Notes: generated by a model not told the origin, from the letters alone. Counted from the stretch's first letter, positions 17,801 to 64,000 are shown. The stretch is DNA of 64,000 nucleotides from Macrostomum lignano (GCA_002269645.1 NIVC01003107.1:1-64000), one strand, 5' to 3'. Made by a program: numbers and translations.

Positions 17801-18029
17801 AAACCCGCGGATTTTGAACCCGGGGAATTCTAATCTCCGGAACTACTTTTGCATGTATTCTGAAATCTAAGGCCATACACAAACAAATTAATAGTAGGGT
17901 AGAGGTAGACGTAAAATGGAGCACATTCGTGTAAAATTAGGGTTTGAGGCAAACGTTGATATTGTTGGCTGGGGTACTGCACAGAATGTCAGGCAATGTC
18001 TGTCTGACTCTAAAACATATATTGCTAAA

Positions 18030-18800
18030 CTCTGGTCTCTCCCTGACTCTCCCTATGTCCCTTGGATCCTTTAAAATTTCTATTGTCTCTTTGTTTCCTT
18101 TCTTCTCTCTCATCCCTCGTCTCTCCTCTCTCTTCTCTCCTCTCTCCTCTCTCCTCTCTTCTCTTGTATCTTCCCTCATCTCTCTTCCCTATTCTTTTCT
18201 CTCTCCTCTCCTCTCTCCTTTCTACTTTTCGTTTTCTCTCTGCTCTTCTCTCTCCTCTCTACTCTTTCGTTTTCTCCCTCCTCTCCTCTCTCCTCTCTCC
18301 CCCTGTTCTCTCGTCTCTTCCCTCACATCTTTCCTCTCTCTCTTTCCACTCATCTCTTTTCTTGTTTTATATCTTCTCTCTCATACATGTGCAACAGTCG
18401 GCCGAGTCGGCCAATCTGGCCGACCAATTTGGCGGCCAACCAAGGAAGTCGCAAAAATGCCCACCCAAAAAACGCCAAAGTAGTAGTACTAAATAGCTGA
18501 CGAGGCATTTCGGCTTAAAAAGTCAGTCATAGTTACTCCTGCCGTTTACCCTGTAGTACATTAATTTTGCTTTAGGGTTTTTTTACATGTAAGTTGCATT
18601 TTTGGCCAAAAACTATGTCGCATTTTTGTTAAAACTAAGTCGCATGGCCGACCAAATTTTGGAGGTTGAGCATGTATGTTCTCTCTCCCCTCGTCGCCCG
18701 TCTCTTCCCTCACCTCTCTTCTCTCTCATCTGCTCTTTCATCTCTCCTTTCTCTTCTTTTATCTTTTCTCTCTTATCTCTTCTCGTTTCTATCTGCTCTG

Positions 18801-18873
<73 letters not shown>

Positions 18874-19835
18874 TTCATTCTCCTATTTCCTCTTCTCTCT
18901 CCCTGTCTCTCCTCTCTCCTCTAGTCTCTGTAATCTCTTCTCTCCCATCTTTCTTCTCCTCTCTACTCTCTCCCCTCCATTCTCCTCTTTTCTCTCCTCT
19001 CGCCTCACTCACTTCTCTCTCCCTTTGTCTCTCCTCTCGTCTCTGTAATCTCTTCTCTCTTCTCTCTCTTCTGTTCTCTCTATTCTCCCATCTCTCGTCT
19101 GTTCATTTTCGTCTCTGCTCTCAGCTCATCCCCCCTCTTTCATCTGTCATCTTTACTGTCTTAATGTTCTCTCATTTTGTCCTCTGTACTCTTTTCTTTC
19201 ACCTCTTTTGTCTCCTCACTTTCCTTTCTCCTTTCTTCTCTTCTCTTCTCTTCCCTCTTCTATATACTCTCTCCATCTCTTGTCTCGTCTCTTCTCTCTC
19301 CACTCTCCTCCTTTATCTCTCATCTCTCATTTCTCATCTCTCCTTACACCTCTCTCATCTGTACAACTTTATCTCTTCTCTCTTCCATTCTCTCTCTTAT
19401 CTCTCCTTTCTCCTCTTTACTAACTCCTCTCTACTCGCTCCTCTCCACTCGCTACTCTACTGTCTACTCTCTCCTATCTACTCTACTGTCTACTCTCTCC
19501 TATCTACTTGCTCCTCTACTCGCTCCTCTACTCTCTCCTCTCTACTCGCTCCTCTCTACTCTTTCCTCTCCACTCGCTACTCTACTCTTTCCTCTCCACT
19601 CGCTACTCTACTCTCTACTCTCTCCTCTCTACTCGCTCCTCTCTACTCTTTCCTCTCTACTCGCTCCTCTACTCTCTCCTCTCTACTCGCTCCTCTACTC
19701 TCTCCTCTCTACTCTCTCCTCTCATCGTCCTCGCTCCCTCATCTCTTCTATTATCTTTTATCTTTTCTCTTATTCCCTCTCTCACCTCTCCTCTCTTTTC
19801 GAATAGTCTATTCCTTCTTCTCCCCACTCTCAACT
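18030..19835. repeat. Polypyrimidine (TC-rich) low-complexity tract including a pure (CT)n run at about 18805-18870
   Basis: Almost entirely C/T on the + strand. It explains the spurious Leu/Ser ORFs in the track. Confidence 0.95.
18382..18678. mobile_element. hAT-like MITE, 297 bp, inserted in the TC tract
   Basis: TIRs CATACATGTGCAAC and GTTGAGCATGTATG (14 bp, 2 mismatches). 8-bp TSD TTCTCTCT at 18374-18381 and 18679-18686. Subterminal GGCCGACCA motifs. Confidence 0.75.
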
Positions 19836-20344
19836 GCCCTCAGCCATAAGCTGGATTCTTTTCTAGACTTAGAGGTAAAAGTCTGCCCATTCCTGCTTGG
19901 AAAGCCAGTTTGTGGGACGTAGTACTCTCATGGCTGTTCTCATGCTTTGATCATGTCATCTTTCTTGCCAATTTGCAAGCCCTGAAAAGAATTTTTGTAT
20001 CTTCAGCTCCACTGCAGTCTGCATCAGTCTAACAACCAAGGAAATACGCATTTCTTAGGAGGCCATTTAAAATTTACACAGTACCTTTAAAAGAAACCTA
20101 AAATTTCCATGGTGTGCCTAATTTAGTAGGGTTATATTGCATTGCATCGCATCGCCTTTTCATAAATCTTTCGCTTTTACAAACCATGCTGGATTCCCTC
20201 GATTTGCCAATTGCCATCCAGTGTTAAACTGCTGCAGAGTTTGCCAATACAGAGGGGAGGGCAGTGGTTAGAATTTCTCACTAAACTGTTATGGCTAAAC
20301 GTAGCCTCTCCACTCTCGGGGTGCAGAGAAGGTTATAAATAAAG

Positions 20345-47197: not shown

Positions 47198-48880
47198 CCA
47201 TGATCATCATCTTTAGTCACCCATGACCATCATCTTTAGTCACCCATGACCATCATCTCTAGTCACCCATGACCATCATCTCTAGTCACACATGACCATC
47301 ATCTCTAGTCACCCATGACCATCATCTCTAGGGTCAACCATGACCATCATCTCTAGGGTCACCCATGACCATAATCTCTAGTCATCCATGACCATCATCT
47401 CTAGTCACCCATGACCATCATCTCTAGTCACCCATGACCATCATCTCTAGTCACCCATGACCATCATCTCTAGTCACCCATGACCATCATCTCTAGTCAC
47501 CCATGACCATCATCTCTAGGGTCACCCATGACCATCATCTCTAGGGTCAACCATGACCATCATCTCTAGTCATCCATGACCATCATCTCTAGTCATCCAT
47601 GACCATCATCTCTAGTCACCCATGACCATCATCTCTAGTCATCCATGACCATCATCTCTAGTCACCCATGACCATCATCTCTAGGGTCACCCATGACCAT
47701 AATCTCTAGTCATCCATGACCATCATCTCTAGTCACCCATGACCATCATCTCTAGTCATCCATGACCATCATCTCTAGTCATCCATGACCATCATCTCTA
47801 GTCACCCATGACCATCATCTCTAGTCATCCATGACCATCATCTCTAGTCATCCATGACCATCATCTCTAGTCACCCATGACCATCATCTCTAGTCATCCA
47901 TGACCATAATCTCTAGTCATCCATGACCATCATCTCTAGTCACCCATGACCATCATCTCTAGTCATCCATGACCATCATCTCTAGTCACCCATGACCATC
48001 ATCTCTAGGGTCACCCATGACCATCATCTCTAGTCATCCATGACCATCATCTCTAGTCACCCATGACCATCATCTCTAGGGTCACCCATGACCATCATCT
48101 CTAGTCACCCATGACCATCATCTCTAGTCACCCATGACCATCATCTCTAGGGTCACATATGACCATATCTCTAGTCACCCATGACCATCATCTCTAGTCA
48201 CCCATAACCATCATCTCTAGTCATCCATGACCATCATCTCTAGTCATCCATGACCATCATCTCTAGGGTCACCCATGACCATAATCTCTAGTCATCCATG
48301 ACCATCATCTCTAGTCACCCATGACCATCATCTCTAGTCATCCATGACCATCATCTCTAGTCACCCATGACCATCATCTCTAGTCATCCATGACCATCAT
48401 CTCTAGGGTCACCCATGACCATAATCTCTAGTCATCCATGACCATCATCTCTAGTCACCCATGACCATCATCTCTAGTCATCCATGACCATCATCTCTAG
48501 GGTCACCCATGACCATAATCTCTAGTCATCCATAACCATCATCTCTAGTCACCCATGACCATCATCTCTAGTCATCCATGACCATCATCTCTAGTCACCC
48601 ATGACCATCATCTCTAGTCACCCATGACCATCATCTCTAGGGTCACCCATGACCATCATCTCTAGGGTCATCCATGACCATCATCTCTAGTCACCCATGA
48701 CCATCATCTCTAGGGTCACCCATGACCATCATCTCTAGTCACCCATGACCATCATCTTTAGGGTCACCCATGACCATCATCTCTAGTCACCCATGACCAT
48801 CATCTCTAGTCACCCATGACCATCATCTCTAGTCACCCATGACCATAATCTCTAAGGTCACCCATGACCATCATCTCTAG
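47198..48880. repeat. 23/25-bp minisatellite, about 70 copies
   Basis: Unit ATGACCATCATCTCTAG(GG)TCA[C/T]CC. It ends about 100 bp before the RRM-gene acceptor. Confidence 0.95.
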
Positions 48881-48982
48881 AACGTTCATCCCTTATCAAT
48901 CAATGCTTAAGCCATGAAATTAACCTCTAAACCTTGCATACACATCCTATATCAGTATGCATAAATTAATTAAATGTTTCAG

Positions 48983-50462
48983 ATGATTGGCACAATCCCA
49001 CCAAGCTGGAAGCAGCAGCAGCATCAGCAGCAGCATGCGGCCATTCAACAGCCGTGCTATCAGCAGGGTAATCAACAATCTCAGCTTCAACAGTGCTACT
49101 ATCTAGCGCCGCCGCTACCGCCTGCGTTTCATTTGCCACCGCCGCCTCACCCGCCACCCCCGCCACCGCCGCCGGCCCCGCCGCCCCCTCAGCCGTGTAG
49201 CGAGCTATTTATTGGCAATCTGCCGCCAACGGCCACCAAATCCGATCTAACTCGTGAATTAAGCCGATTCGGCCCGCTGGAACACGTCAGCCTAGCCTAC
49301 GGGCCTGGCGGCGGATTTCGCGGCTTTGCATTCGCTAAATTTGCTCGCATCCAATCGGCTATTGGCCTGGTTGATGGCCGGGGCCACGGTTTAATGTTGG
49401 ACGGTCGGCTGTTGCGTATTGAATGGCGTCGGAAAGGCGTCGGAAGTGGCAGCGGCGGCGGCGTCGGTAGCGGGGTTGGCGATGCTCCGCCTACCAGTGT
49501 ATCCACATTTTCGGCTGGACCGGTAATGGTCAGCGCTACTGCCGTAAGTCTGTTAAGATGAGTTAACTAATCCGCACCTACATGTATCCGTATCGATGAC
49601 CTTAATCCACACCTTAAGCATCCGTCTCTAATTCATACGTAATCCACCCTAAGCAGTCCCCAATCTATCCCTAATCCGTGCCTAAGCATCGGTCTCTAAT
49701 CCCGATCTCTAATCCATCCCTAATCCATCCCTAATCCGTCCCTAAGCATCGGTCTCTAATCCATCACTAATCCGTCCCTAAGCGTCGGTCCCTAATCCAT
49801 CCCTAATCCGTCCCTATGCATCGGTCCCTTATCTCCCTAATCCGTCCCTAAGCATCAGTCCCTAATCCATCCCTAATCCGTCCCTAAGCATCGGTCCCTA
49901 ATCCATCCCTAATCCGTCCCTAAGCATCGGTCCCTAATCCATCCCTAATCCGTCCCTAAGCATCGGTCCCTTATCTCTCTAATCCAGTGTGCTTGTAAAA
50001 GTACATTCTACAAAGCATTAATCGCGCTCCCTTAATCCACAGACTCATCAGCGCCCAGCAGAATTTGGTGAATATTCTTTCGCATCAACTAATCCTACTG
50101 CAGCCAGTAGTAACGCAGCAACCAAAGCGCAACCGGTCGCTCGTTGCCAGCATCAGCAGCGTCATCATCTGCAGCAGCAGCATACTGAGCAGCCGGATTG
50201 CCAGCTACCAGCTTGGCTGCACACCCGCCTAGTAGAGGACACCGAACGCCTGGTAGACTGTCTACTAGCCGAACTGCGCCTGTGCAATCGGCTCGCTGCA
50301 ACGACTTCCAATCCAAATGAGGCTGCTCAATTGCGTCAACAGGCTCGAGAATTAGAGAGCCGAATGCAAACTCGATCTGCTGAGCTGGCCAATCTGAATG
50401 GGGCTGGCTGTTTGGCCTGTCGCTCGAGTCGGAATGGCGGCGTACCGAATACCAAGTGCTAA
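48983..50462 (+). CDS. Single-RRM RNA-binding protein with Gln/Pro-rich N-terminus; exons 48983-49543, 50043-50462
   Basis: RNP2 LFIGNL and RNP1 RGFAFAKF. Phase-0 intron GTAAGT...TAATCCACAG; exon 2 reads open to TAA at 50460-50462. The ATG directly follows TTTCAG. Confidence 0.8.
49690..49985. repeat. 36-bp CCCTAA-rich repeat in the RRM-gene intron
   Basis: Unit CCCTAATCCATCCCTAATCCGTCCCTAAGCATCGGT. Confidence 0.85.
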
Positions 50463-50557
50463 GTGCTACCGTATTGACTTGTCGAATTCTTTTACAGTAA
50501 TCAACCTCTTCTAAATTTGCTAACTATGAGTACTGTATCCACCACTAGTTGATAAAA

Positions 50558-51235
50558 TCGCCCCTAAACTACCCGTGAGAGTCGCCCCTAAACTACCCGT
50601 GAGAGTCGCCCCTAAACTACCTGTGAGAATCGCCCCTAAACTACCTGTGAGAATCGCCCCTGAACTACCCGTGAGAGTCGCCCCTAAACTACCCGTGAGA
50701 ATCGCCCCTAAACTACCCGTGAGAATCGCCCCTAAACTACCCGTGAGAATCGTCCCTAAACTACCCGTGAGAATCGTCCCTAAACTACCCGTGAGAATCG
50801 TCCCTAAACTACCCGTGAGAGTCGCCCCTAAACTACCCGTGAGAGTCGCCCCTAAACTACCCGTGAGAGTCGCCCCTAAACTGCCCATGAGAATCGCCCC
50901 TAAACTACCCGTGAGAATCGCCCCTAAACTGCCCATGAGAATCGCCACTAAAATACCCGTGAGAGTCGCTCCTTAACTACCTGTGAGAATCGCCCCTAAA
51001 CTACCCGTGAGAGTCGCCCCTAAACTACCCGTGAGAATCGTCCCTAAACTACCCGTGAGAATCACCCCTAAACTGCCCATGAGAATCGCCACTAAAATAC
51101 CCGTGAGAGTCGCTCCTTAACTACCTGTGAGAGTCGCCCCTAAACTACCCGTGAGAGTCGCCCCTAAACTACCCATGAGAATCGCCCCTAAACTACCTGT
51201 GAGAGTCGCCCCTAAACTACCCATGAAAATCGCCT
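50558..51235. repeat. 24-bp minisatellite
   Basis: Unit CGCCCCTAAACTACCCGTGAGA[G/A]T. Confidence 0.95.
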
Positions 51236-51991
51236 CTGCACTACCTGAAAAATTTAGGGGTAGCTCCTGAACCACACAGCAGCTTTAGAATCAAAGTTAT
51301 TTTTGTATTTTCCTCATAAATTGCATAGTAAAGTACGCATTGACCCAATTCAGCCAAAATTGTTAATCGGTAAATTAAATCCTGCATACGGTTGCCTACG
51401 GTTTTTAATTACTTACGTTTTGCCTTTCAATTTCGCTTCTTTAAGTAATAAAAATCGCGCATGAACTTGCTAATTTAATATATTTTTTTGCTAACTTGTC
51501 CCACTTAAAAGCATTTCCCATGTGTTTATTAACATGCACTATTTTATGTGACTATTTTTTGTTTGCCTATCGGTGCTATCTGCATTGCTTGTTTTTTTGT
51601 TCGATTCTTCTTTGTCTCACTTTGCCTTCCTTGTGCGTACATATCCGCCAGTCTTTGTTGTGCTGCTTTACAAACACGCTTTATTTATTTATTTATTAAA
51701 TATTAGTACCATATATGCGCCATGTAAGGCAGCCTATTTTTTTAACTTGCCTTTTGTGACTTGTTATTTTTTCTCTTAAGCTATCCTTGGACGGCGTGCG
51801 TTTAAACTAGTTGACTCTTCTTTTGTCTTTTTTTAACTTTGTTTAATTTTGTTAAACCTTGTCTCGCAATTTTGTAATATCTATGGCAATCAATAAATAT
51901 TGTGCAAATCAATTTTTGCGTTGCTTTACCAACCTGTTGCATTTGACTTTGGCATTGTTTTAGTCTTTTATCTAAGCTTAGTATGCCAATC

Positions 51992-52881
51992 TCACAGCTA
52001 AGCACCCCGATCTCAGCTAAGCATCCCAATCTCATAGCTAAGCATCCCAATCTCATAGCTAAGCACCCCAATCTCATAGCTAAGCATCCCAATCTCATAG
52101 CTAAGCATCCCAATCTCATAGCTAAGCATCCCAATCTCATAGCTAAGCATCCCAATCTCACAGCTAAGCATCCCAATCTCATAGCTAAGCACCCCAATCT
52201 CATAGCTAAGCATCCCAATCTCATAGCTAAGCATCCCAATCTCACAGCTAAGCATCCCAATCTCACAGCTAAGCATCCCAATCTCACAGCTAAGCATCAC
52301 AATCTCATAGCTAAGCATCCCAATCTCACAGCTAAGCATCCCAATCTCATAGCTAAGCACCCCAATCTCATAGCTAAGCATCCTAATCTCATAGCTAAGC
52401 ACCCCAATCTCATAGCTAAGCATCCCAATCTCATAGCTAAGCATCCCAATCTCATAGCTAAGCATCCCAATGTCACAGCTAAGCATCCCAATCTCACAGC
52501 TAAGCATCCCAATCTCATAGCTAAGCACCCCAATCTCACAGCTAAGCATCTCAATCTCATAGCTAAGCACCCCAATCTCATAGCTAAGCATCCCAATCTC
52601 ACAGCTAAGCATCCCAATCTCATAGCTAAGCACCCCAATCTCATAGCTAAGCATCCTAATCTCATAGCTAAGCATCCCAATCTCATAGCTAAGCATCCCA
52701 ATCTCATAGCTAAGCATCCCAATCTCATAGCTAAGCACCCCAATCTCACAGCTAAGCATCCCAATCTCATAGCTAAGCACCCCAATCTCATAGCTAAGCA
52801 TCCCAATCTCATAGCTAAGCATCCCAATCTCATAGCTAAGCATCTCAATCTCATAGCTAAGCACAGCTAAGCATCTCACAG
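51992..52881. repeat. 21-bp minisatellite, about 42 copies, ending about 35 nt before C19orf12
   Basis: Unit CTAAGCATCCCAATCTCA[T/C]AG. Confidence 0.95.
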
Positions 52882-52915
52882 GTAGCCACCCTCTCCGCGC
52901 CAACAGCCGGCAGCA

Positions 52916-53335
52916 ATGCTAGATCCGGTAAAAGTCTTCGACCTGCTAGTGAAGCTATCCGAGGAGGAAGGCATTCGAGTCACCGTCAAGCAGTCCGCTA
53001 AAGGTGCTGCAATCGCCGGAGGCAGCGCCTTTGTCGGCGGACTTCTCGGTGGCCCAGTCGGTGTAGCCGTCGGCGGCGCCGTTGGTGGCCTGGCGGGCGC
53101 CTGGGCCACGTCGGGCCAATTCGAACCGCTGGCTACGGTGCTGCTTCGATTGCCGCAAGAAAAACGCAACGATTTGGTGGACTCTACAATGGATTTATTG
53201 CGCGGTTTTGACATTACTGATGCGGTTATGCTGGCTACTATGCTGGCTGGCAATATGGATCTGCGAACTCAGATGCTTGCCCAGCTGAGTGCTTTTGCCA
53301 CTGAACAGCTTGGTCTCATGCTGAAGCCGTCTTGA
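52916..53335 (+). CDS. C19orf12: C19orf12 family membrane protein (glycine zipper), intronless
   Basis: VKQSAKGAAIAGGSAFVGGLLGGPVGVAVGGAVGGLAGAWATSGQFEP matches the C19orf12 core; 139 aa. Confidence 0.92.
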   Translation: MLDPVKVFDLLVKLSEEEGIRVTVKQSAKGAAIAGGSAFVGGLLGGPVGVAVGGAVGGLAGAWATSGQFEPLATVLLRLPQEKRNDLVDSTMDLLRGFDITDAVMLATMLAGNMDLRTQMLAQLSAFATEQLGLMLKPS

Positions 53336-53700
53336 GTAGACTGCTCATGATTCAACTATTTCATATTCCAATGTCTGACATGTCATGTGCCGATTCTAAC
53401 AAGTTTATTCTATTCAGAAATTTGCCAGCTTTTATCTGTGTTTTACTGTGTTTTACGATTGATATCATTGATTTCTAATTATTTTCTGTGATAATTGGTT
53501 TTTTATATTAATAAAATGGTCTCGTGCTACATTAGGTCGAATGATAGATTGACATCGATGTAATAATTATTATTAAGCTTTAGTAAATTTTAATACAGAT
53601 TTTTTATTAATTAAAACTAACCCTAACCCTGGTCTCTTTTAGAGCTAAGACTATCCCCGTTAATTCCTCAAAACGAAGACTTCTAATTCCTTAAAACAAA

Positions 53701-53950
53701 GGAGGCTGTAGCCTAGTGGTTAAAGCGTTGCACTCACGACTTAAAGGTCGGGGGTTCGATTCCCGATTCCAGTCGGAACAATTTGTGTCCTTGAGCAAGA
53801 CACTTAACTCTGCATTGCTTCAGTTCACCCAGCTGTAAAATGGGTGCCAGCATTAGCTGGGGTAATTGAGGGTGTGTGTGGCGACCCCCCAGTTCTTGGA
53901 CTGAACAGCCGTACGCAGCCTTCAGTCGGTTGCACATCTGGCCTAATTGG
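53701..53950 (+). mobile_element. tRNA-derived CORE-type SINE (family 1), copy B
   Basis: A box TAGCCTAGTGG, B box GGTTCGATTCC, CORE-like TCCTTGAGCAAGACACTTAACTC...CTGTAAAATGGG. Collinear with copy A apart from an internal indel. Confidence 0.82.
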
Positions 53951-54120
53951 GCTCTAAAACAGAATCCAAAACTAAGACTTCTAAACCTCCAAAACAAAGA
54001 CTTCTAAATCCTCTTAAAATCTGTAAGAACTAAACTTAGACTCAGATATAAGGCATCAAGAACAAAGACTTCTCTTTTGATCCTTGTTTTGAAATTTTCA
54101 CTTTCTAATCCCGCCCGCAG

Positions 54121-56277
54121 GCATCCACCGTTGACGTTAGCGACGCCCTAGCAGCGGCTGGCGAGTTTCTGAGGGCCAAGCGCCTCTGCGATAATCATGA
54201 TAATAATAATAAACATGCATATTCTCTTGTGTCTCTACTGCTGCCCCGACTGCGCAGCGCGGCCGATTGTGACGCTTTTGCTAGCGTCGACGGCGTCGCT
54301 TACAAATTAGCCGGCCATCTGGGCGGTCGGCAGGCCAACGAAGCCCTGTCCGCTGCCTACCTGCTGCTCCGGCTGACTGCCCGCTGCAGTCCCGGGGCGT
54401 CTGGCACCGCTGAATTGATTCGCCAGACTAGGCCCTACTGCATTGGCCACGTTGTCGGCGCCGGTTCCGGCTTGATGCGCCGGCTAAGCCTAGCGGCTCT
54501 GGTTAACTGCTGCCGCGCCAGCGTGTCTCTCGGCGCCAGATTGGTCCGTCTGGGCTTGCTTGACGCCTGCCTGCTGCAGTTGAAGTCTGCGGATGCTGCC
54601 GACGAGGACGATCAACAACAAGATTTGATGGCTTGGCGAGTGCTGGCGCTTGCCCGGCTGGCCAGGCTCTGCTGCCTGCCGCAGAGTCGGGCGCTGCGCG
54701 ATTTGATGACCCATCGGCTGCCGGCTGCGGTCGAGCTGCTGCGGAACCTGTGCCAGAGAGCCGCTGACCGGCTGGCTGCTGGTGGGTGCACCGGATCACC
54801 CCGATGGCTATGACTGAGAATTTTTGTTCTCTGTGTCGCTTCGGCTGTCGGCCATCTTCTCTCTCTCTCTCTCTCATGTCTCCATCTCTCCTCTTCCTCT
54901 CCCTTTATCCTTCTTTTCTTCTCCTTCTCCCTCTGTACTTCTATCTCCTCTCTCCTTCCTCTCCTCCTTCTATTTTTTTATCAGAGGCAAATGACGCTGG
55001 CTCTGGCGCACTTCAAGGGACATTGTCACACAACCGGCGAGAGGCATTACTGCTCATTCCGCCCCGACTCCCCTAAGCAGGCACACAAGCGCGCGGATAC
55101 GTATGCAGTCACACGCACAGGCACACGCTCACACAGGAGTGTACAGCGGCCCTAACTTTATCGTTAGACATGTACACTTCACTGTGTCTTGGGGGGTTGT
55201 CAATCAAGGGCGTTAATTGCACGAGCAGAGCCAAGCCGAGATTTCAATTTAGTCCCAATTAATTTGGCTGCACTTGGAATCGAGCCTGGGCCGCTGGCAC
55301 ATCAAAGCGCCACGCCGGACCACTACGGCACCCTGTCCATTTCTACTATTTCCTCTCCTCCCTCCCTCCCGACGCCGCCCGCAGGCCACGTCGACCCGGC
55401 ACTTTGCCAGCCATTCTTCGCCGCCTGCTGTCTGCACCGCGCCTTCCTGACTCCGACTACTGCCGCATCGTCGTCCTCGAAGGACGTCGCCGCCGACATA
55501 GCTGATCAACCTCATGAACAGCACCTGGCGAATCTGCTGACTCCACAGCATCCGCTATTGCTAGCGGAATTAGCTTCATCAATAGATCAACGGCAGCAGA
55601 AAACCGACAGATTATCAGGAGAACAGAGCTCATTAGCTGGCCAATTGGCTCGGGGACTTCGCTGCTGCTCGGCCAGATCGGCCTATCTGTTGTCCACGAA
55701 TTTGCCAGATTTCATTGGATTAGAAGCCACCTGTAGATTGATTGGCCAACTAGCCGAATTAACTAATCGGCATCGAGCTTCGTCAGAGGTTGGCGATCTT
55801 CTAGCCGCTATTGCCAGTTTGACTGCCGCTTTGATCCGATTTGAATCGGCTCCGGTGGCGCTCTCTGAGCTTTCCGGTCCGGCGCTGCTTCGATTAGGCG
55901 CCTGCGCGCCCAATTGGCTCTGCGCCAATAGTAGCAACAATAGCTGGTCAGAGTTGGCGCTCAATTTAGCCGCCGATCAGTTGCGTAGAAATTCTGGCCA
56001 GCTTAGCGATTTGGAATTAGCCGAGTTGCCAAGCTTAGTGACAGCTTGTCAGGCTTGTCTGGGTAATTCGGCCTGCTCTAGCCAAGCTGGCCTCGGACAC
56101 CGACTGTTATTGCCTACTCTGCAAGTCTTGTCGCTTATCAAACGTCACGTCGGATTTGAGTCTTGGAATCGACTTGTAGGCGATAATCGCTTGCTGAATC
56201 AACTGCTGGTGGACTGCAGCGGCTTGGCCGCCTCGGCTGCTGAGCAGACCGCCTATCTCATTGGTGGCGGCGAGTGA
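54121..56277 (+). CDS. Leu/Ala-rich alpha-solenoid (ARM/HEAT-like) protein, about 517 aa, no genomic initiator ATG; exons 54121-54781, 55385-56277
   Basis: The frame is open from acceptor CCGCCCGCAG (54120). Phase-1 intron G|GTGGGT...CCCGCAG|GC. 661+893=1554 nt, a multiple of 3, ending in TGA. Upstream in-frame TAA at 54106; first in-frame ATG at 54475. The fold call comes from helical Leu/Ala periodicity only. Confidence 0.7.
54971..55335 (-). mobile_element. SINE family 2, CpG-intact copy, in the intron of the ARM-like gene
   Basis: On the minus strand: A box GCCGTAGTGG, B-box-like GGCTCGATTCC and an A-rich tail. Collinear with 12061-12445. Confidence 0.8.
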
Positions 56278-56295
56278 TGCTTGGAATGGACCGCA

Positions 56296-56855
56296 GGGTG
56301 ACGGGGGGAGCTGAATTGGATTGGGGGTGACGGGGGAGCTGAAGGAGTGGAGGGTGACGGGGGAGCTGAAGGAGTGGAGGGTGACGGGGGGAGGACCTGA
56401 AGGAGTGGAGGGTGACAGGGGAGCTGAAGGACTGGAGGGTGACGGGAGGACCTGAAGGAGTGGAGGTTGACGGGGGAGCTGAAGGAGTGGAGGTTGACGG
56501 GGGAGCTGAAGGAGTGGAGGTTGACGGGGGAGCTGAAGGAGTGGAGGTTGACGGGGGAGCTGAAGGAGTGGAGGTTGACGGGGGAGCTGAAGGAGTGGAG
56601 GTTGACGGGGGAGCTGAAGGAGTGGAGGGTGACGGGAGGAGCTGAAGGAGTGGAGGGTGACGGGGGAGCTGAAGGAGTGGAGGGTGACGGGGGAGCTGAA
56701 GGAGTGGAGGGTGACGGGAGGAGCTGAAGGAGTGGAGGGTGACGGGGGAGCTGAAGGAGTGGAGGGTGACGGGGGAGCTGAAGGAGTGGAGGGTGACGGG
56801 GGAGCTGAAGGAGTGGAGGGTGACGGGGGAGCTGAAGGAGTGGAGGGTGACGGGT
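56296..56855. repeat. G-rich 27/28-bp minisatellite just after the stop of the ARM-like gene
   Basis: Unit GAAGGAGTGGAGGGTGACGGGGGAGCT. Confidence 0.95.
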
Positions 56856-57400: not shown

Positions 57401-58872
57401 ATGGGCGGCGGACACGAGCCTGAACCGACACGGGAGTCGCTCTACACCCCAGTGACTAGCAAGGCATTCACTGACACTTGGCTATTCAAAGCATTTGACT
57501 TGCCAACTACCTGGTTCAAGGAGAATGTGATTGACAAGTACAGGAAGAAATATCCCTATTATCATCGCCGATATCCTAGGGTGCCTACTATCGACCAGTG
57601 CTTTGTTGATGACGAACTTTGCAATCTGGAGGCCGACGAGCAGTACAAAAGGGATCGGTGAGTTTTTACTGTTAAATTAAAAAATAAGTTACATTTTCTT
57701 ACTAACCTACTAACTAGTAAAATGTCAAATAATTATCACTATTTTTGTGATATCGATGTGAAAATCTATACAATAGAACCATTTTCCCGATATGTAGCGT
57801 TGATATTTTCGAGACTGAGAATAGCAACTTTTTAATTACAAGTAAATTTTTACCTGTCCCCAACTAACTTAGCCTGGTTGACCAGGAGATTGTCAACATA
57901 CTTCGTCGTCGACGGGAACAGTGCTTCCAGTGGTACGGCAGGCAGCGCGACCTTATTGAGAAACACTGCGGCCAGATTCAAAAGGATTATGATGAAGGTA
58001 ATATTTGCGATCGGAAGAAAATCTACGACGAGAGTGACCAGGTTAAAGGAACAGTGACAAGGGTTAGAATTAGACTAGCTAGGCTCAGCGATCGAAAGAG
58101 TGACAAGGATAACTATAGTGTGAATAGGAGAGTGTGACAAGTAGTCATCTAGGAGAGTGACAAGGATAGCTATAGTGTGAATAGGAGAGTGTGACAAGTA
58201 GCCATCTAGGAGAGTGACAAGTAGTCATCTAGGAGAGTGACAAGTAGTCATCTAGGAGAGTGACAAGTAGTCATCTAGGAGAGTGACAAGTAGTCATCTA
58301 GGAGAGTGACAAGTAGCCATCTAGGAGAGTGACAAGTAGTCAACTAGGAGAGTGACAAGTAGCCATCTAGGAGAGTGACAAGTAGTCATCTAGGAGAGTG
58401 ACAAGTGGCCATCTAGGAGAGTGACAAGTAGCCATCTAGGAGAGGGACAAGTGGCCATCTAGGAGAGTGACAAGTAGCCATCTAGGAGAGGGACAACTGG
58501 CCATCTAGGAGAGTGACAAGTAGCCATCTAGGAGAGGGACAACTGGCCATCTAGGAGAGTGAAAAGTGGCAATCTATGGGAGTGACAAGTAGTTGAAACT
58601 CCCCTCCCACCCACGCAGCCTCCACCAACTACTTCATCAAGCACGGCGACATGGGCTACGCGCACAACGTTAAGAACGCCCTGATGAAGCAGAAGCACCG
58701 GATGCTGTGGGAAAGAAAATACGGCGAAGTTGGCAGCCGAGGCGATCCACACAAATATCCGAATGTGATTGATATGGAGCCTGGCACTCTAGAGCACGAG
58801 GACACTTTGATTGGCAACATGCGCAAATTCGGCAACAATCACGATCGAAATCCGAAAGAGATGGCGCCCTAA
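57401..58872 (+). CDS. NDUFB10: NADH dehydrogenase (ubiquinone) 1 beta subcomplex subunit 10; exons 57401-57657, 57873-57997, 58619-58872
   Basis: YPYYHRRYPRVPTIDQC...EADEQYKRDR|LVDQEIVNILRRRREQC...|...KHGDMG...LMKQKHRMLWER. The phase-2 and phase-1 introns keep the frame. Confidence 0.92.
58128..58592. repeat. 23-bp minisatellite in NDUFB10 intron 2
   Basis: Unit GGAGAGTGACAAGTAG[T/C]CATCTA. Confidence 0.95.
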
Positions 58873-59274: not shown

Positions 59275-59710
59275 GGACTGGGACTGGGACTTGGAGTGGG
59301 ACTGGGGTTGGGACTAGGACTGGGACTTACGAGTATACTGAAACTGGGACCGGAATAGGACTGGGACTTGGACTGGAAGTGGGACTGGGAGTCGGATTGG
59401 GACTTGGAGTGGGGCTGGGACTTGGACTGGGACCTGAAGTGGGACTCGGTTAGGACCTGGAGTGGGACTCGGTTGGGACCTGGAGTGGGACTCGGTTGGG
59501 ACCTGGAGTGGGACTCGGTTGGGACCTGAAGTGGGACTCGGTTGGGACCTGGAGTGGGACTCGGTTGGGACCTGGAGTGGGACTCGGTTGGGACCTGAAG
59601 TGGGACTCGGTTGGGACCTGGAGTGGGACTCGGTTGGGACCTGGAGTGGGACTCGGTTGGGACCTGGAGTGGGACTCGGTTGGGACCTGGAGTGGGACTC
59701 GGTGTGGGAC
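59275..59710. repeat. G-rich 6-bp-derived and 23-bp repeats between NDUFB10 and the Rab gene
   Basis: GGGACT-based run, then unit GGACCTGGAGTGGGACTCGGTTG. Confidence 0.92.
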
Positions 59711-59874: not shown

Positions 59875-60097
59875 ATGGAGCAACTAATGAAAATATTAGT
59901 AATTGGCGATCCAACAGTTGGTAAAACTTCGTTCGTTCATCGATATGTGAATAACATGTTTCAGACTGACTATAAGCAGACCATCGGGGTGGACTTTGCG
60001 CTTAAAGTTATTCGCTGGTCTGACACTCAAACTATTAAACTGCAGATGTGGGACATTGCCGGGCAGGAGAGGTGAGCACTGGCTGACTGACTGACTG

Positions 60098-60129
<32 letters not shown>

Positions 60130-61479
60130 ACTGACTGACTGACTGACTGACTGACTGACTGACTGACTGACTGACTGACTGACTGACTGACTGACTGACT
60201 GACTGACTGACTGACTGACCCACTGACTGACTGACTGACTGACTGACTGACTGACTGACTGACTGACTGACTGACTGACTGACTGACTGAACCACTGACT
60301 GACTGACCCACTGACTGACTGAACCACTGACTGACTGACTGACTGACTGACTGACTGACTGACCCACTGACTGACCCACTGACTGACCCACTGACTGACT
60401 GAACCACTGACTGACTGACTGACTGACTGACCCGCTGACTGACTGAACCACTGACTGACTGACTGACTGACTGACCCACTGACTGACTGACTGACTGACT
60501 GAACCACTGACTGACTGACTGACCCACTGACTGACTGACTGACTGACTGACTGACTGACTGACCCACTGACTGACTGAACCACTGACTGACTGACTGACT
60601 GACTGACTGACTGACTGACTGACCCACTGACTGACTGACTGACTGACTGACTGACTGACTGACTGACTGACTGACTGACTGACTGACTGACTGACTGACT
60701 GACTGACTGACTGACTGACTGACTGACTGACTGACTGACTGACCCACTGACTGACTGAACCACTGACTGACTGACTGACTGACTGACCCACTGACTGACT
60801 GAACCACTGACTGACTGACTGACTGGCCCACTTACCCACTGACTGACTGACCCACTGACTGACTGACTTGAGTGAGTGGGTGACTGACTGACTGACTGAC
60901 TGACTGACTGACTGACTGACCCACTGACTGACCCACTGACTGACTGACTGAGACACAGAGAAAGACACAGGCAGTCAGCCAACCCCCCACCCCTGCAGGT
61001 TCACCTCCATGACGCGAGTGTACTACAGAGACGCCCACGCAGCCGTAATCGTATTTGACTTAACCAAACGCTCAACATTTGACGGTGCGCTGAAATGGAA
61101 ACGCGATTTGGACAGCAAATGCGCCCTGCCCGATGGCAGCCCGCTGCCGGCCATCCTGCTGGCTAATAAATGCGACTTGTTGAGCGGCGAGCGGCAGCTG
61201 CAACTGTCCGAGATTGAGACATTCTGCAGAGAGAACGGCTTCATTGGTTGGACAGAGGTCAGCGCCAAGGAGGGCGTCATGATTGAGGAGGCGATGCGAT
61301 TTCTAATTGAATCGGTGCTAGCCAAGACTGCCAACTCTGAGTCGGCGGCTCAGACAGTCTCACTGACCGACGATCCGGCCATTGTCCGGCTGGGGGCGGT
61401 TAGCGGCGCGAAGAACAAGCCGCGGCGTGGTAACGCAGATGAGGACGATGAAATCGGCGGCGGCAGATGTGCGTGCTAG
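59875..61479 (+). CDS. RAB29: Rab GTPase of the Rab29(Rab7L1)/Rab32/38 subfamily, closest to Rab29; exons 59875-60071, 60999-61479
   Basis: WDIAGQER|FTSMTRVYYRDA, KVIRWSD and ENGFIGWTE are Rab29-like (Rab32/38 has FGNMTR and GWFE). C-terminal CAC prenylation motif; phase-2 intron. Confidence 0.85.
60083..60952. repeat. (GACT)n microsatellite with GACCCACT/GAACCACT interruptions, filling the Rab intron
   Basis: Read directly from the sequence. Confidence 0.97.
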
Positions 61480-61589: not shown

Positions 61590-63380
61590 AGAATGTCTTG
61601 GAAAACTATCACTCAGACTCTTTGAAATCGCCCTGGAATTTCTTGGAAAACTGTCCCTTAGATTCTTTGAAATCGGTTTTTATTCTTAAAAAAACTATCC
61701 CTCAGATTCTTTGAAATCGGTTTCAAACTCCTTAGAAAACTGTCCCTCAGATCCTTTGAAATCGATTTCAAACTCCTTAGAAAACTGTCCCTCAGATCCT
61801 TTGAAATCGATTTCAAACTCCTTAGAAAACTGTCCCTCAGATTCTTTGAAATCGATTTCAAACTCCTTAGAAAACTGTCCCTCAGATTCTTTGAAATCGA
61901 TTTCAAACTCCTTAGAAAACTGTCCCTTAGATTCTTTGAAATCGGTTTCAAACTCCTTAGAAAACTGTCCCTCAGATTCTTTGAAATCGATTTCAAACTC
62001 CTTAGAAAACTGTCCCTCAGATCCTTTGAAATCGATTTCAAACTCCTTAGAAAACTGTCCCTCAGATCCTTTGAAATCGATTTCAAACTCCTTAGAAAAC
62101 TGTCCCTTAGATTCTTTGAAATCGGTTTCAAACTCCTTAGAAAACTGTCCCTCAGATTCTTTGAAATCGATTTCAAACTCCTTAGAAAACTGTCCCTTAG
62201 ATTCTTTGAAATCGGTTTCAAACTCCTTAGAAAACTGTCCCTCAGATCCTTTGAAATCGGTTTCAAACTCCTTAGAAAACTGTCCCTCAGATTCTTTGAA
62301 ATCGATTTCAAACTCCTTAGAAAACTGTCCCTCAGATTCTTTGAAATCGATTTCAAACTCCTTAGAAAACTGTCCCTCAGATCCTTTGAAATCGATTTCA
62401 AACTCCTTAGAAAACTGTCCCTCAGATCCTTTGAAATCGATTTCAAACTCCTTAGAAAACTGTCCCTCAGATTCTTTGAAATCGATTTCAAACTCCTTAG
62501 AAAACTGTCCCTCAGATTCTTTGAAATCGATTTCAAACTCCTTAGAAAACTGTCCCTCAGATCCTTTGAAATCGATTTCAAACTCCTTAGAAAACTGTCC
62601 CTCAGATCCTTTGAAATCGATTTCAAACTCCTTAGAAAACTGTCCCTCAGATTCTTTGAAATCGATTTCAAACTCCTTAGAAAACTGTCCCTCAGATTCT
62701 TTGTAATCGATTTCAAACTCCTTAGAAAACTGTCCCTTAGATTCTTTGAAATCGGTTTCAAACTCCTTAGAAAACTGTCCCTCAGATCCTTTGAAATCGG
62801 TTTCAAACTCCTTAGAAAACTGTCCCTCAGATCCTTTGAAATCGGTTTCAAACTCCTTAGAAAACTGTCCCTCAGATTCTTTGAAATCGGTTTTTAATTT
62901 CTTAGAAAACTGAATCTCCGAATATTTGAAATCGGCTTTTTAATTTCTTAGAAAACTGAATCTCCGAATATTTGAAATCGGTTTTTAATTTCTTAGAAAA
63001 CTGAATCTCCGAATATTTGAAATCGGTTTTTAATTTCTTAGAAAACTGACTCTCCGAATATTTGAAATCGGTTTTTAATTTCTTAGAAAACTGACTCTCC
63101 GAATATTTGAAATCGGTTTTTAATTTATTAAAAAACTGACTCCGAATATTTGAAATCGGTTTTTAATTTCTTAGAAAACTGAATCTCCGAATATTTGAAA
63201 TCGGTTTTTAATTTCTTAGAAAAATGACTCTCCGAATATTTGAAATCGTTTTTTTTTGTTCTTAGAAAACTGACTCCGAATATTTGAAATCGATTTTTTT
63301 ATTTTCTTAGAAAACTGACTCCGAATATTTGAAATCGGTTTTTAATTACTTCGAAAACTGTCTCTCAAACTCTTTGAAAT
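61590..63380. repeat. 45-bp satellite: about 27 homogeneous copies with an 18-bp palindrome, then about 10 diverged copies
   Basis: Unit CTGTCCCTCAGATTCTTTGAAATCGATTTCAAACTCCTTAGAAAA. After about 62890 the unit becomes CTGAATCTCCGAATATTTGAAATCGGTTTTTAATTTCTTAGAAAA. Confidence 0.95.
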
Positions 63381-64000
63381 CGCTTGTTATTTAAATTTGT
63401 TCAGTTTTTTTATCTTTTAAAGCTTAAGAGATCACAGAACAACACAAAATTATCAGATAAGGTCACAGAACCCCACCAGATGTAATGCGATGTTTAAAAC
63501 ATTCTTGTGTGTAATATTAAATTCCTTATTTTCAATAGATCCCATGCAGTTATATTCAAGATATTACTAAAACCTGCTATCTATTGTGTTAACTGTAAAA
63601 CAGCTTGTAATTATCAATCATATATCAGCTGTTATTTGTCGTACGCGTGCAATATGTTAAAATAAAACCAGATTTTCTTGTTATTCAGCTTGGCCAATTA
63701 TGAATATTTGTCTTACTCTTAAGAATAATATCTTATTTTGGCGGCTACTGGTGCTGTGAATCTCTTCCAAAATTTAATGGTGAATGTTTCTTATTCCATC
63801 ATTAATTATTTGATATCACATTTAATTGGTGCTCTAAGACTGTCTTCCATAGTTTTAGTAAATATTCAATTTTTTAGATTGCACTGCTGCCATCTTTTTG
63901 GCAGGTTTTTGACTGAATTTTTTATTATTATACTGTCTCGATTTAGAGGTCTTTTGGACACCTAATTTTTTATATTGTAATTTTCCACTCCTGGATCATC

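What the first reader, a model, noticed from the sequence alone, without database searches (positions are those of the whole stretch)
54100..54480. Gene with no start codon of its own: initiator Met probably donated by the spliced leader's terminal AUG
Seen: a branch-point-like TCTAAT (containing an in-frame TAA at 54106) and acceptor CCGCCCGCAG|54121 are followed in phase 0 by 118 open codons (ASTVDVSDALAAAGEFLRAKR...) before the first in-frame ATG at 54475. I found no phase-compatible ATG exon between the C19orf12 stop (53335) and this site. Established: flatworm SL exons end in AUG, and in Schistosoma that AUG can act as initiator. Inference: trans-splicing creates M-ASTVDVS..., making translation of this protein dependent on SL addition.
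Basis: partly seen in the sequence, partly recalled or inferred. Interest (0 to 1): 0.8.

Follow-up and report, generated by a model that had tools for sequence, protein, structure and literature searches.

The report
Flatworm gene borrowing spliced-leader start codon
This is a Macrostomum lignano (flatworm) gene of unknown function whose reading frame opens right at a splice acceptor with no start codon of its own, so its first methionine most likely comes from the AUG that ends the trans-spliced leader; that mechanism was already described for flatworms in 2006, so this is a clean example rather than a new phenomenon.

Summary
There is an in-frame TAA at 54106-54108 and a CAG acceptor ending at 54120. 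The frame is open from 54121, and the first in-frame ATG is at 54475, 118 codons in.

The window is Macrostomum lignano contig NIVC01003107.1. The published M. lignano spliced leader (SL) ends in ...TTGCATG. GenBank's RNA-seq-based annotation calls this gene (BOX15_Mlig007275g3) and two paralogues "partial". Each has a CDS without a start codon, beginning 3, 24 or 27 nt after this acceptor, and none has an upstream exon.

The 118 pre-ATG codons look coding:
- frame 0 has no stops, against 5 and 12 in the other frames;
- the codon-usage score is positive only in frame 0;
- the three paralogues show no indels here, while the flanking non-coding DNA has many.

The four nominal upstream ATG-exon candidates are destroyed in the paralogues. 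Two out-of-frame ATGs lie before 54475.

The SL-donated AUG giving M-ASTVDVS... (518 aa) is therefore the best explanation, with confidence about 0.75. No SL-junction read or protein evidence could be reached.

The mechanism is known (Cheng et al. 2006, Schistosoma), so this is a new member of a known kind. The protein is a lineage-restricted orphan, weakly predicted to be all-helical, lying about 600 bp downstream of C19orf12 in an operon-like same-strand gene row.

The parts
52907..53335 (+). Upstream neighbour, a single-exon C19orf12-like gene. Its annotated CDS starts directly after the acceptor CAACAG| (52901-52906) as PAAMLDP..., and its native ATG is at 52916.
   Evidence: Pfam PF20721, E = 4e-33. 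The paralogues are named 'partial' in GenBank. An SL AUG would be in frame here too.
53511..53516 (+). AATAAA poly(A) signal of C19orf12. It places the end of the upstream mRNA about 585 nt before the acceptor.
   Evidence: Read from the sequence. Conserved in the paralogues.
53701..53960 (+). tRNA-derived SINE-like insertion, flanked by ~23-nt repeat units, inside the outron/intercistronic spacer.
   Evidence: Sequence, flanking direct repeats, and a second related copy at window 1132. ARAGORN and Rfam call nothing here.
54096..54120 (+). Proposed trans-splice acceptor region: pyrimidine-rich tract, branch-point-like TCTAAT (54103-54108, containing the in-frame stop TAA 54106-08) and CAG| ending at 54120.
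   Evidence: Of all AG sites in 53540-54480 it has the highest pyrimidine content (77%) together with CAG. It is the only site directly after the last in-frame stop, and it gives 517 open codons. The sequence from 54098 through the acceptor is identical in all three paralogous loci; the nearest differences are at 54072 and 54097.
54121..54474 (+). The 118 codons of exon 1 that precede any in-frame ATG (ASTVDVSDALAAAGEFLRAKR...GAGSGL).
   Evidence: No stops in frame 0, against 5 and 12 in the other frames. Codon-usage log-likelihood is +28 bits in frame 0 (+24 when trained on other genes only), and near zero or negative in the five other frames and in non-coding controls. No indel columns among three paralogues, against 55 in 585 bp of intergenic DNA and 165 in 603 bp of intron.
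54197..54217 (+). Two out-of-frame ATGs (54197, 54215; frame +1; short ORFs of 37 and 31 codons). A ribosome would meet them before ATG 54475.
54475..54477 (+). First in-frame ATG (MRRLSLAAL...). This is the start used by the older automatic model UniProt A0A1I8FBY1.
54121..54781 (+). Exon 1 of the gene (BOX15_Mlig007275g3). It ends in phase 1 at the donor G|GTGGGT.
   Evidence: Splicing 54781|55385 reproduces the GenBank protein PAA53274.1 exactly (...RLAAGHVDP...).
54782..55384 (+). Intron (GT...CAG) carrying a tRNA-like SINE remnant on the minus strand (~55200-55330).
   Evidence: Sequence. High substitution and indel load among the paralogues.
55385..56277 (+). Exon 2 through the stop codon TGA (56275-56277). 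It is followed at once by a 27-nt minisatellite (56295-56854).

Best explanation
The gene at 54121-56277 (GenBank BOX15_Mlig007275g3, two exons, 517 codons) has no initiation codon in the genome. Its pre-mRNA is either read through from the C19orf12 gene about 600 bp upstream or started within that spacer. It is trans-spliced at the CAG acceptor ending at 54120 to the 35-nt M. lignano spliced leader CGGTCTCTTACTGCGAAGACTCAATTTATTGCATG. The leader's last three bases, AUG, then sit in frame with GCA TCC ACC..., with a favourable G at +4. This produces a 518-aa protein, M-ASTVDVSDALAAAG.... Shown here: the organism, the leader's published terminal ATG, the anatomy of the acceptor, the frame relationship, the coding character of the 118 pre-ATG codons, the lack of any conserved upstream ATG exon, and a start-less RNA-based public gene model at this position. 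Inferred: that trans-splicing happens at exactly 54120|54121, and that ribosomes initiate at the leader's AUG. Leaky scanning or re-initiation at 54475 could also give a minor 399-aa form.
For: 1. Organism. The window is identical to M. lignano NIVC01003107.1.

2. Leader. The SL ends in ATG, and 30-39% of genes are trans-spliced (PMC8629364; PMC5730564). All reported flatworm SLs end in AUG, and that AUG can initiate translation (Cheng et al. 2006, as cited in PMC9851317 and PMC12582326).

3. Annotation. The public annotation trims SLs, cuts transcripts at SL-read peaks and runs TransDecoder. It gives 5'-partial CDSs for this gene and paralogues g4 and g1, starting 3, 24 and 27 nt after the acceptor. 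None has an upstream exon. If the transcript reached further upstream, the CDS would have been extended to 54109, just after the TAA.

4. Control. The neighbouring C19orf12 CDS is also 'partial' and starts exactly after its own acceptor.

5. Coding signature of 54121-54474. Frame 0 has 0 stops in 118 codons against 5 and 12 in the other frames. Chance of staying open is 0.03. Codon-usage score is +28 bits in frame 0 only. GC jumps from 40% upstream to about 60%. No indels among three paralogues, while the intergenic DNA and the intron have many.

6. Selection. Across the whole gene, 11 variable codons are nonsynonymous and 13 synonymous, P = 0.002 against a neutral expectation of 75% nonsynonymous.

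7. Upstream exons. All phase-compatible upstream ATG exons are broken in the paralogues, by a TAA, by loss of the ATG, or by deletion of the donor. The sequence from 54098 through the acceptor and on to 54166 is identical in all three copies.

8. Acceptor. 54121 is the best acceptor in the region and the only one placed directly after the last in-frame stop.

9. Upstream AUGs. Two out-of-frame AUGs precede 54475.
Against: The annotated CDS starts at 54124, not 54121, and the paralogues start 24 and 27 nt in. The annotated 5' ends are therefore ragged and do not pinpoint the junction. The acceptor CCGCAG departs at one position from the published trans-splice motif [T/C]TNCAG. The -3 position of the SL AUG is U, a weak context. 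Nonsynonymous to synonymous changes in the pre-ATG segment alone are 4:3, which is not distinguishable from neutral. No orthologue outside M. lignano exists to test conservation of the N-terminus. The structure model is too poor (pLDDT 47) to show that the N-terminus belongs to the fold.
Confidence: 0.75

Rival explanations
1. Translation starts at the internal ATG 54475, giving a 399-aa protein. In this reading 54121-54474 is a long 5' leader that is open by chance, whether or not the mRNA is trans-spliced.
For: The older automatic model UniProt A0A1I8FBY1 starts at MRRLSLAAL. The SL AUG has a weak -3 U. Nonsynonymous to synonymous changes in the pre-ATG segment are 4:3, not significantly constrained. 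All five variable codons in 54475-54781 are synonymous, so constraint looks stronger after the ATG.
Against: If the mRNA is trans-spliced at 54121, the SL AUG comes first and is in frame with no stop, so any initiation there yields the long protein. Two out-of-frame AUGs (54197, 54215) stand before 54475. The pre-ATG frame has a coding codon-usage score, no stops and no indels across paralogues. A0A1I8FBY1 is a chimeric, frameshifted model that runs into NDUFB10 and Rab.
Confidence: 0.12
2. An unannotated cis-spliced 5' exon supplies the ATG and is joined to 54121. It would lie in the spacer, or further upstream beyond C19orf12.
For: Four nominal phase-0 ATG...GT candidates exist in 53347-53518 of this copy. 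The annotated 5' ends are ragged, so short first exons could have been missed.
Against: All four candidates lie in the C19orf12 3' UTR or poly(A) signal and have weak donors (GTTTTA, GTCTCG). All are destroyed in paralogues that keep the ORF intact. Three independent RNA-based gene models show no upstream exon. The spacer is mostly SINE and minisatellite.
Confidence: 0.06
3. The locus is not a normally translated gene. It could be a decaying or non-coding transcript, or one that uses a non-AUG start. In that case the missing ATG would simply reflect loss of function or an annotation artefact.
For: It is an orphan: no homologue was found in 5.8 billion clustered or 1.84 billion representative proteins, and there is no Pfam or PDB match. 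More than half of the variable codons in exon 2 are nonsynonymous.
Against: The 517-codon ORF is preserved across a phase-1 intron in three paralogues with no frameshift or stop. The whole gene shows an excess of synonymous change (P = 0.002). Codon usage matches other genes.
Confidence: 0.05

Closest known systems
Flatworm mRNAs that use the spliced leader's 3'-terminal AUG as initiator methionine (Cheng, Cohen, Ndegwa & Davis 2006, J Biol Chem 281:733; called 'slORFs' in PMC9851317)
   Same: The SL exon ends in AUG. The AUG falls in frame with the body ORF at the trans-splice junction. The body has no usable AUG of its own near the 5' end. According to PMC9851317, in Schistosoma mansoni the SL AUG is in frame in 28% of trans-spliced mRNAs and more than 40 cDNAs need it.
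   Different: The species is a free-living macrostomorph, not a parasite. In the papers I could read, SL-AUG use in M. lignano is not analysed. The distance to the next in-frame AUG is large (118 codons). The protein is a lineage-restricted orphan. Neither the junction nor initiation is experimentally shown here.
[quoted passage not shown] 2017, PMC5730564; Ustyantsev & Berezikov 2021, PMC8629364)
   Same: Same genome and annotation. The neighbour is on the same strand, about 585 nt upstream (less after subtracting repeats). That is under the published 1-kb operon threshold. Repeats inflate the spacer, as those authors describe.
   Different: I could not see this gene's trans-splicing flag or the SL-read track. 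The acceptor CCGCAG is one base off the enriched motif [T/C]TNCAG.
Nematode, ascidian and euglenozoan slORFs that start at near-cognate codons in the SL (PMC9851317)
   Same: The concept is the same: SL addition creates or extends an ORF.
   Different: Those leaders lack a terminal AUG and rely on UUG, CUG and similar codons. Here a canonical AUG sits exactly at the junction.

Membership tests
SL-AUG-initiated flatworm mRNA (Cheng et al. 2006 type) | The organism has an SL RNA whose exon ends in AUG | tested here: met
   The window is M. lignano. The published SL is CGGTCTCTTACTGCGAAGACTCAATTTATTGCATG (PMC8629364). The SL gene itself is not in the window.
SL-AUG-initiated flatworm mRNA (Cheng et al. 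2006 type) | The mRNA is trans-spliced to the SL at the acceptor in question | tested here: inconclusive
   The evidence is indirect only. The SL-aware annotation starts the 5'-partial CDS 3 nt after the acceptor. This is the best acceptor in the region. The control gene C19orf12 starts exactly at its own acceptor. No junction reads were reachable.
SL-AUG-initiated flatworm mRNA (Cheng et al. 2006 type) | The SL AUG is in frame with the main ORF, with no intervening stop | tested here: met
   ATG|GCA TCC ACC... gives 517 open codons to TGA 56275-77 across the phase-1 intron.
SL-AUG-initiated flatworm mRNA (Cheng et al. 2006 type) | No genomic AUG can start the full ORF, and the sequence upstream of the first internal AUG is coding | tested here: met
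   The first in-frame ATG is 118 codons in. The coding signature is confined to frame 0 and there are no indels among paralogues. The upstream ATG exon candidates are not conserved.
SL-AUG-initiated flatworm mRNA (Cheng et al. 2006 type) | Ribosomes actually initiate at the SL AUG (protein or footprint evidence) | not testable with these tools
   No Ribo-seq or proteomics data were accessible.
M. lignano operon (criterion of PMC8629364) | Adjacent same-strand genes, repeat-adjusted spacer under 1 kb, downstream gene SL trans-spliced | tested here: inconclusive
   Same strand and a spacer of about 585 nt, including about 260 nt of SINE plus repeat units, so the distance criterion is met. The trans-splicing status of the downstream gene is inferred, not seen.

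The most novel reading that the evidence does not exclude
This could be a Macrostomum-restricted orphan gene that owns neither a promoter (it may ride the C19orf12 transcription unit) nor a 5' UTR nor a start codon, taking all three from operon read-through and the spliced leader. That would make it a concrete case for SL trans-splicing with a terminal AUG lowering the barrier to gene birth: any long open frame that acquires an acceptor becomes translatable.
Probability: 0.15. Interest if true: 0.55.

Novelty: new member of a known kind. Interest (0 to 1): 0.3.

Why it matters
First, it corrects an annotation. BOX15_Mlig007275g3 and its paralogues g1 and g4 are labelled 'partial' in GenBank, and UniProt carries a truncated or chimeric version. 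The likely complete product is 518 aa beginning MASTVDVS. The same logic probably applies to many 'partial' M. lignano models whose CDS begins at a trans-splice site; the neighbouring C19orf12 is a second example in this window.

Second, M. lignano is transgenic-tractable. A gene with 118 codons between the SL AUG and the next in-frame AUG would therefore be a convenient in vivo reporter for testing how efficiently the flatworm SL AUG initiates.

It does not change the understanding of the mechanism, which has been known since 2006.

Tried and rejected
- **Homology.** I searched for homologues to test whether the first 118 residues are conserved. The word-indexed search and the exhaustive HMMER search found only M. 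lignano copies. The one other hit, P0008, is a translated tandem repeat and is spurious.
- **Domain and structure databases.** Pfam at E <= 10 and PDB sequences at E <= 10 gave nothing. UniRef's names 'Separase' and 'RAP domain-containing protein' for fragments or chimeras of this gene have no support in these searches.
- **Structure prediction.** The AlphaFold2 single-sequence model has mean pLDDT 47. It is all-helical but too uncertain for a fold search, so none was run.
- **RNA evidence.** I looked for RNA-derived contigs carrying the SL junction. MPAAMLDP... and the native C19orf12 protein are not on record. The cluster holding this gene contains only GenBank and UniProt genome-derived entries.
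- **SL gene.** The SL sequence is not in the window.
- **RNA families.** Rfam and ARAGORN found nothing in or around the spacer.
- **Literature.** No paper mentions Mlig007275. No supplements are held for the trans-splicing paper. Cheng et al. 2006 itself is not in the library and is cited second-hand.
- **Assembly error.** An indel that would put ATG 54197 in frame is rejected, because three separately assembled copies agree without indels.
- **Alternative acceptor.** The AG at 54139-40 is rejected, because the SL AUG would then be out of frame (frame 2 relative to 54121), and a transcript starting there would give a CDS beginning DALAAAG, which matches none of the three annotated starts (read directly from the sequence).

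Full report
**What is in the sequence**

- TCTAAT lies at 54103-54108, and its TAA (54106-08) is in frame with what follows.
- A pyrimidine-rich tract ends in CCCGCCCGCAG at 54120.
- From 54121 the frame reads ASTVDVSDALAAAGEFLRAKRLCDNHDNNNKHAYS... without a stop.
- The first in-frame ATG is at 54475, 118 codons in. The ATGs at 54197 and 54215 are in frame +1 and open short ORFs of 37 and 31 codons.
- Frame 0 has no stops in 118 codons, while the other two frames have 5 and 12. Only 3% of composition-matched shuffles stay open that long.
- The upstream gene is a single-exon C19orf12 homologue ending at 53335 (Pfam PF20721, E = 4e-33).

**Identity of the locus**

A protein search with the conceptual product found only Macrostomum lignano entries. 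The window is base-for-base identical to GenBank NIVC01003107.1 of assembly Mlig_3_7 (GCA_002269645.1), and window coordinates equal record coordinates.

The gene is BOX15_Mlig007275g3 (PAA53274.1, 516 aa, 'partial'). Its model has three parts: exon 1 at 54121-54781 with donor G|GTGGGT in phase 1, an intron at 54782-55384, and exon 2 at 55385-56277 ending in TGA. This model reproduces the GenBank protein exactly, except that GenBank starts at Ser (54124).

Two paralogous loci carry 98%-identical copies, in keeping with the duplicated genome of this species. They are g4 on NIVC01000043.1 (locus L001) and g1 on NIVC01002430.1 (locus L002). Both are also 'partial', and they begin 24 and 27 nt after the same acceptor. 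None of the three models has an upstream exon. An older automatic model (UniProt A0A1I8FBY1) starts at ATG 54475. It is frameshifted and runs on into the NDUFB10 and Rab genes downstream, so it carries little weight.

**Why 'partial' is informative**

The Mlig_3_7 annotation was built from RNA-seq. Reads carrying the leader were trimmed of it and mapped, the TBONE pipeline cut transcripts at those peaks, and TransDecoder called ORFs (PMC5730564). Trimming removes the leader's ATG. An ORF that really starts there therefore appears open to the 5' end of the transcript and is reported as 5'-partial.

The neighbouring C19orf12 gene shows the same behaviour. Its CDS is annotated from 52907, the first base after the acceptor CAACAG|, as PAAMLDP.... 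Its paralogues are labelled 'partial', although a native ATG lies three codons in.

For the gene in question, a transcript reaching further upstream would have allowed the ORF to extend to 54109, just after the TAA. The annotated start at 54124 therefore places the transcript's 5' end within 1-3 nt of the acceptor. The offsets of 3, 24 and 27 nt show that the annotated 5' ends are ragged. The RRM gene further upstream likewise starts 15 nt after its TTTCAG|ATG acceptor. This evidence is consistent with trans-splicing at 54120|54121 but does not pinpoint it.

**The leader**

The published M. lignano SL is CGGTCTCTTACTGCGAAGACTCAATTTATTGCATG. Between 30% and 39% of genes receive it, and the enriched acceptor motif is [T/C]TNCAG (PMC8629364; PMC5730564). 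Joined to 54121 it gives ...UUGC AUG GCA UCC ACC..., that is M-A-S-T-V-D-V-S, with G at +4 and U at -3. The acceptor here (CCGCAG) differs from the motif at one position. Among all AG sites from 53540 to 54480 it has the highest upstream pyrimidine content (77%) combined with CAG. It is also the only one placed directly after the last in-frame stop.

**Is the stretch before ATG 54475 coding?**

- *Codon usage.* Scored against mononucleotide background, 54121-54474 gets +28 bits in frame 0, or +24 when the model is trained only on other genes of the window. The other five frames score near zero or negative, as do the intergenic and intron controls.
- *Composition.* GC rises from 40% in the spacer to about 60% at 54121.
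- *Indels.* Across the three paralogues the segment has no indel columns in 354 bp. The intergenic spacer has 55 in 585 bp, the C19orf12 3' UTR has 12 in 200 bp, and the intron has 165 in 603 bp.
- *Substitutions.* The rate here is 2.3 per 100 bp. That lies between the coding values (1.3-1.6) and the non-coding values (3.0-5.0).
- *Selection.* Variable codons are 4 nonsynonymous to 3 synonymous in this segment, which alone is not significant. The whole gene has 11 to 13, P = 0.002 against a neutral 75% nonsynonymous.
- *Amino-acid composition.* It is Ala/Leu/Arg/Ser-rich and matches the rest of the protein.
- *Structure.* A single-sequence AlphaFold2 model is all-helical from residue 5 onward. 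At pLDDT 47 it carries no weight.

**Alternatives tested**

*A cis-spliced ATG exon.* Exhaustive enumeration between 53336 and 54100 gives four phase-0 candidates: ATG 53347, 53371 and 53380 to donor 53440 (GTTTTA), and ATG 53516|GTCTCG. All lie in the C19orf12 3' UTR or on its AATAAA. In paralogue g4 the codon after ATG 53380 is TAA. In g1 that ATG is lost and a 10-bp deletion removes the donor. In both, ATG 53516 is ATT. By contrast, the sequence from 54098 through the acceptor and on to 54166 is identical in all three copies.

*An assembly indel.* This is excluded by the agreement of three independently assembled copies.

*Initiation at 54475.* This would require ribosomes to ignore an in-frame SL AUG and two out-of-frame AUGs. 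A minor short isoform produced by leaky scanning or re-initiation remains possible.

**What the protein is**

No function can be assigned. No homologue exists outside M. lignano in either large protein search (the single extra hit is a translated tandem repeat). There is no Pfam or PDB match even at E = 10. It is a 518-aa, Ala/Leu-rich protein, weakly predicted to be all-helical and lineage-restricted. The database names 'Separase' and 'RAP domain-containing' attached to fragments of it are unsupported here.

**Context**

Five genes lie on the + strand in a row: RRM protein, C19orf12, this gene, NDUFB10 and a Rab GTPase. The spacer between the C19orf12 poly(A) signal (53511-53516) and the acceptor is about 585 nt. 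About 260 nt of it is a tRNA-derived SINE, and much of the rest is ~23-nt repeat units. This falls under the published repeat-adjusted 1-kb operon threshold (PMC8629364). The gene may therefore be the downstream member of an operon, in which case trans-splicing would be obligatory. That is inference.

**Comparison with what is known**

Use of the flatworm SL's terminal AUG as initiator methionine was established by Cheng et al. 2006 in Schistosoma mansoni. I could not read that paper. It is summarised in PMC9851317, which reports the AUG in frame in 28% of trans-spliced mRNAs and more than 40 cDNAs needing it. It is also summarised in PMC12582326 and PMC5832876. The present gene meets the sequence-level criteria of that class. 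The two experimental criteria, junction and initiation, could not be tested. The M. lignano papers I could read do not discuss SL-AUG initiation. The case is therefore a new member of a known kind in a species where it has not been spelled out.

**Verdict**

Novelty is modest. Interest is 0.3: a specialist would not be surprised, but the locus is a clean test case and flags a systematic reason for 'partial' CDSs in the M. lignano annotation.

Noticed in passing
window 52901-52918: The neighbouring C19orf12 gene shows the same anatomy in mild form. Its acceptor CAACAG| ends at 52906, and the annotated 'partial' CDS starts at 52907 (PAAMLDP...). An SL AUG would be in frame three codons before the native ATG at 52916. 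The protein may therefore start as M-PAA-MLDP or at the native Met.
   Followed up: partly
window 48977-49000: In the RRM-protein gene, the acceptor TTTCAG| is followed at once by ATG ATT GGC... (48983), in frame with the annotated CDS, which starts only at 48998. An SL AUG here would give Met-Met. The annotated 5' end is 15 nt short of the acceptor, which shows that 5' ends in this annotation are ragged.
   Followed up: partly
window 48000-48880, 49620-49985, 50556-51245, 51975-52863, 56295-56854, 58097-58592, 59275-59710, 60078-60951, 61597-63382: Nearly every intergenic spacer and several introns in this gene row are filled with long arrays. Most are minisatellites of 21-27 nt units; there is also an (ACTG)n array of ~870 bp and a 45-nt array of ~1.8 kb. 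Two arrays end just upstream of putative trans-splice acceptors (48880 before 48982; 52863 before 52906). This fits the published remark that repeats inflate operon spacers in M. lignano.
   Followed up: partly
window 53701-53960 (+), ~55200-55330 (-), 1132-1155 (+): There are tRNA-derived SINE-like elements. One sits in the spacer upstream of the acceptor, carries a conserved 'GTCCTTGAGCAAGACACTTAAC' core, and has a related copy near window 1132. A different tRNA-like remnant lies inside the gene's intron. ARAGORN and Rfam call none of them. The paralogue L001 carries a ~30-bp insertion inside the first element.
   Followed up: no
window 54110-54122 and 55374-55386: The proposed trans-splice acceptor and the cis acceptor of the gene's only intron are nearly the same 13-mer (CCCGCCCGCAG|GC and GCCGCCCGCAG|GC). 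This may be chance or a local duplication.
   Followed up: no
window 18001-20000: A 2-kb block has extreme strand asymmetry (GC skew -0.64, AT skew -0.55). It is presumably a C/T-rich simple repeat. I did not examine it.
   Followed up: no
UniProt A0A1I8FBY1, A0A1I8IWG6, A0A1I8HAJ8 and A0A1I8IU93 (P0002, P0005-P0007): The database names 'RAP domain-containing protein' and 'Separase' are attached to truncated or chimeric models of this gene. Neither name is supported by Pfam, PDB or homology searches here. A0A1I8FBY1 fuses this gene with NDUFB10 and Rab fragments.
   Followed up: yes
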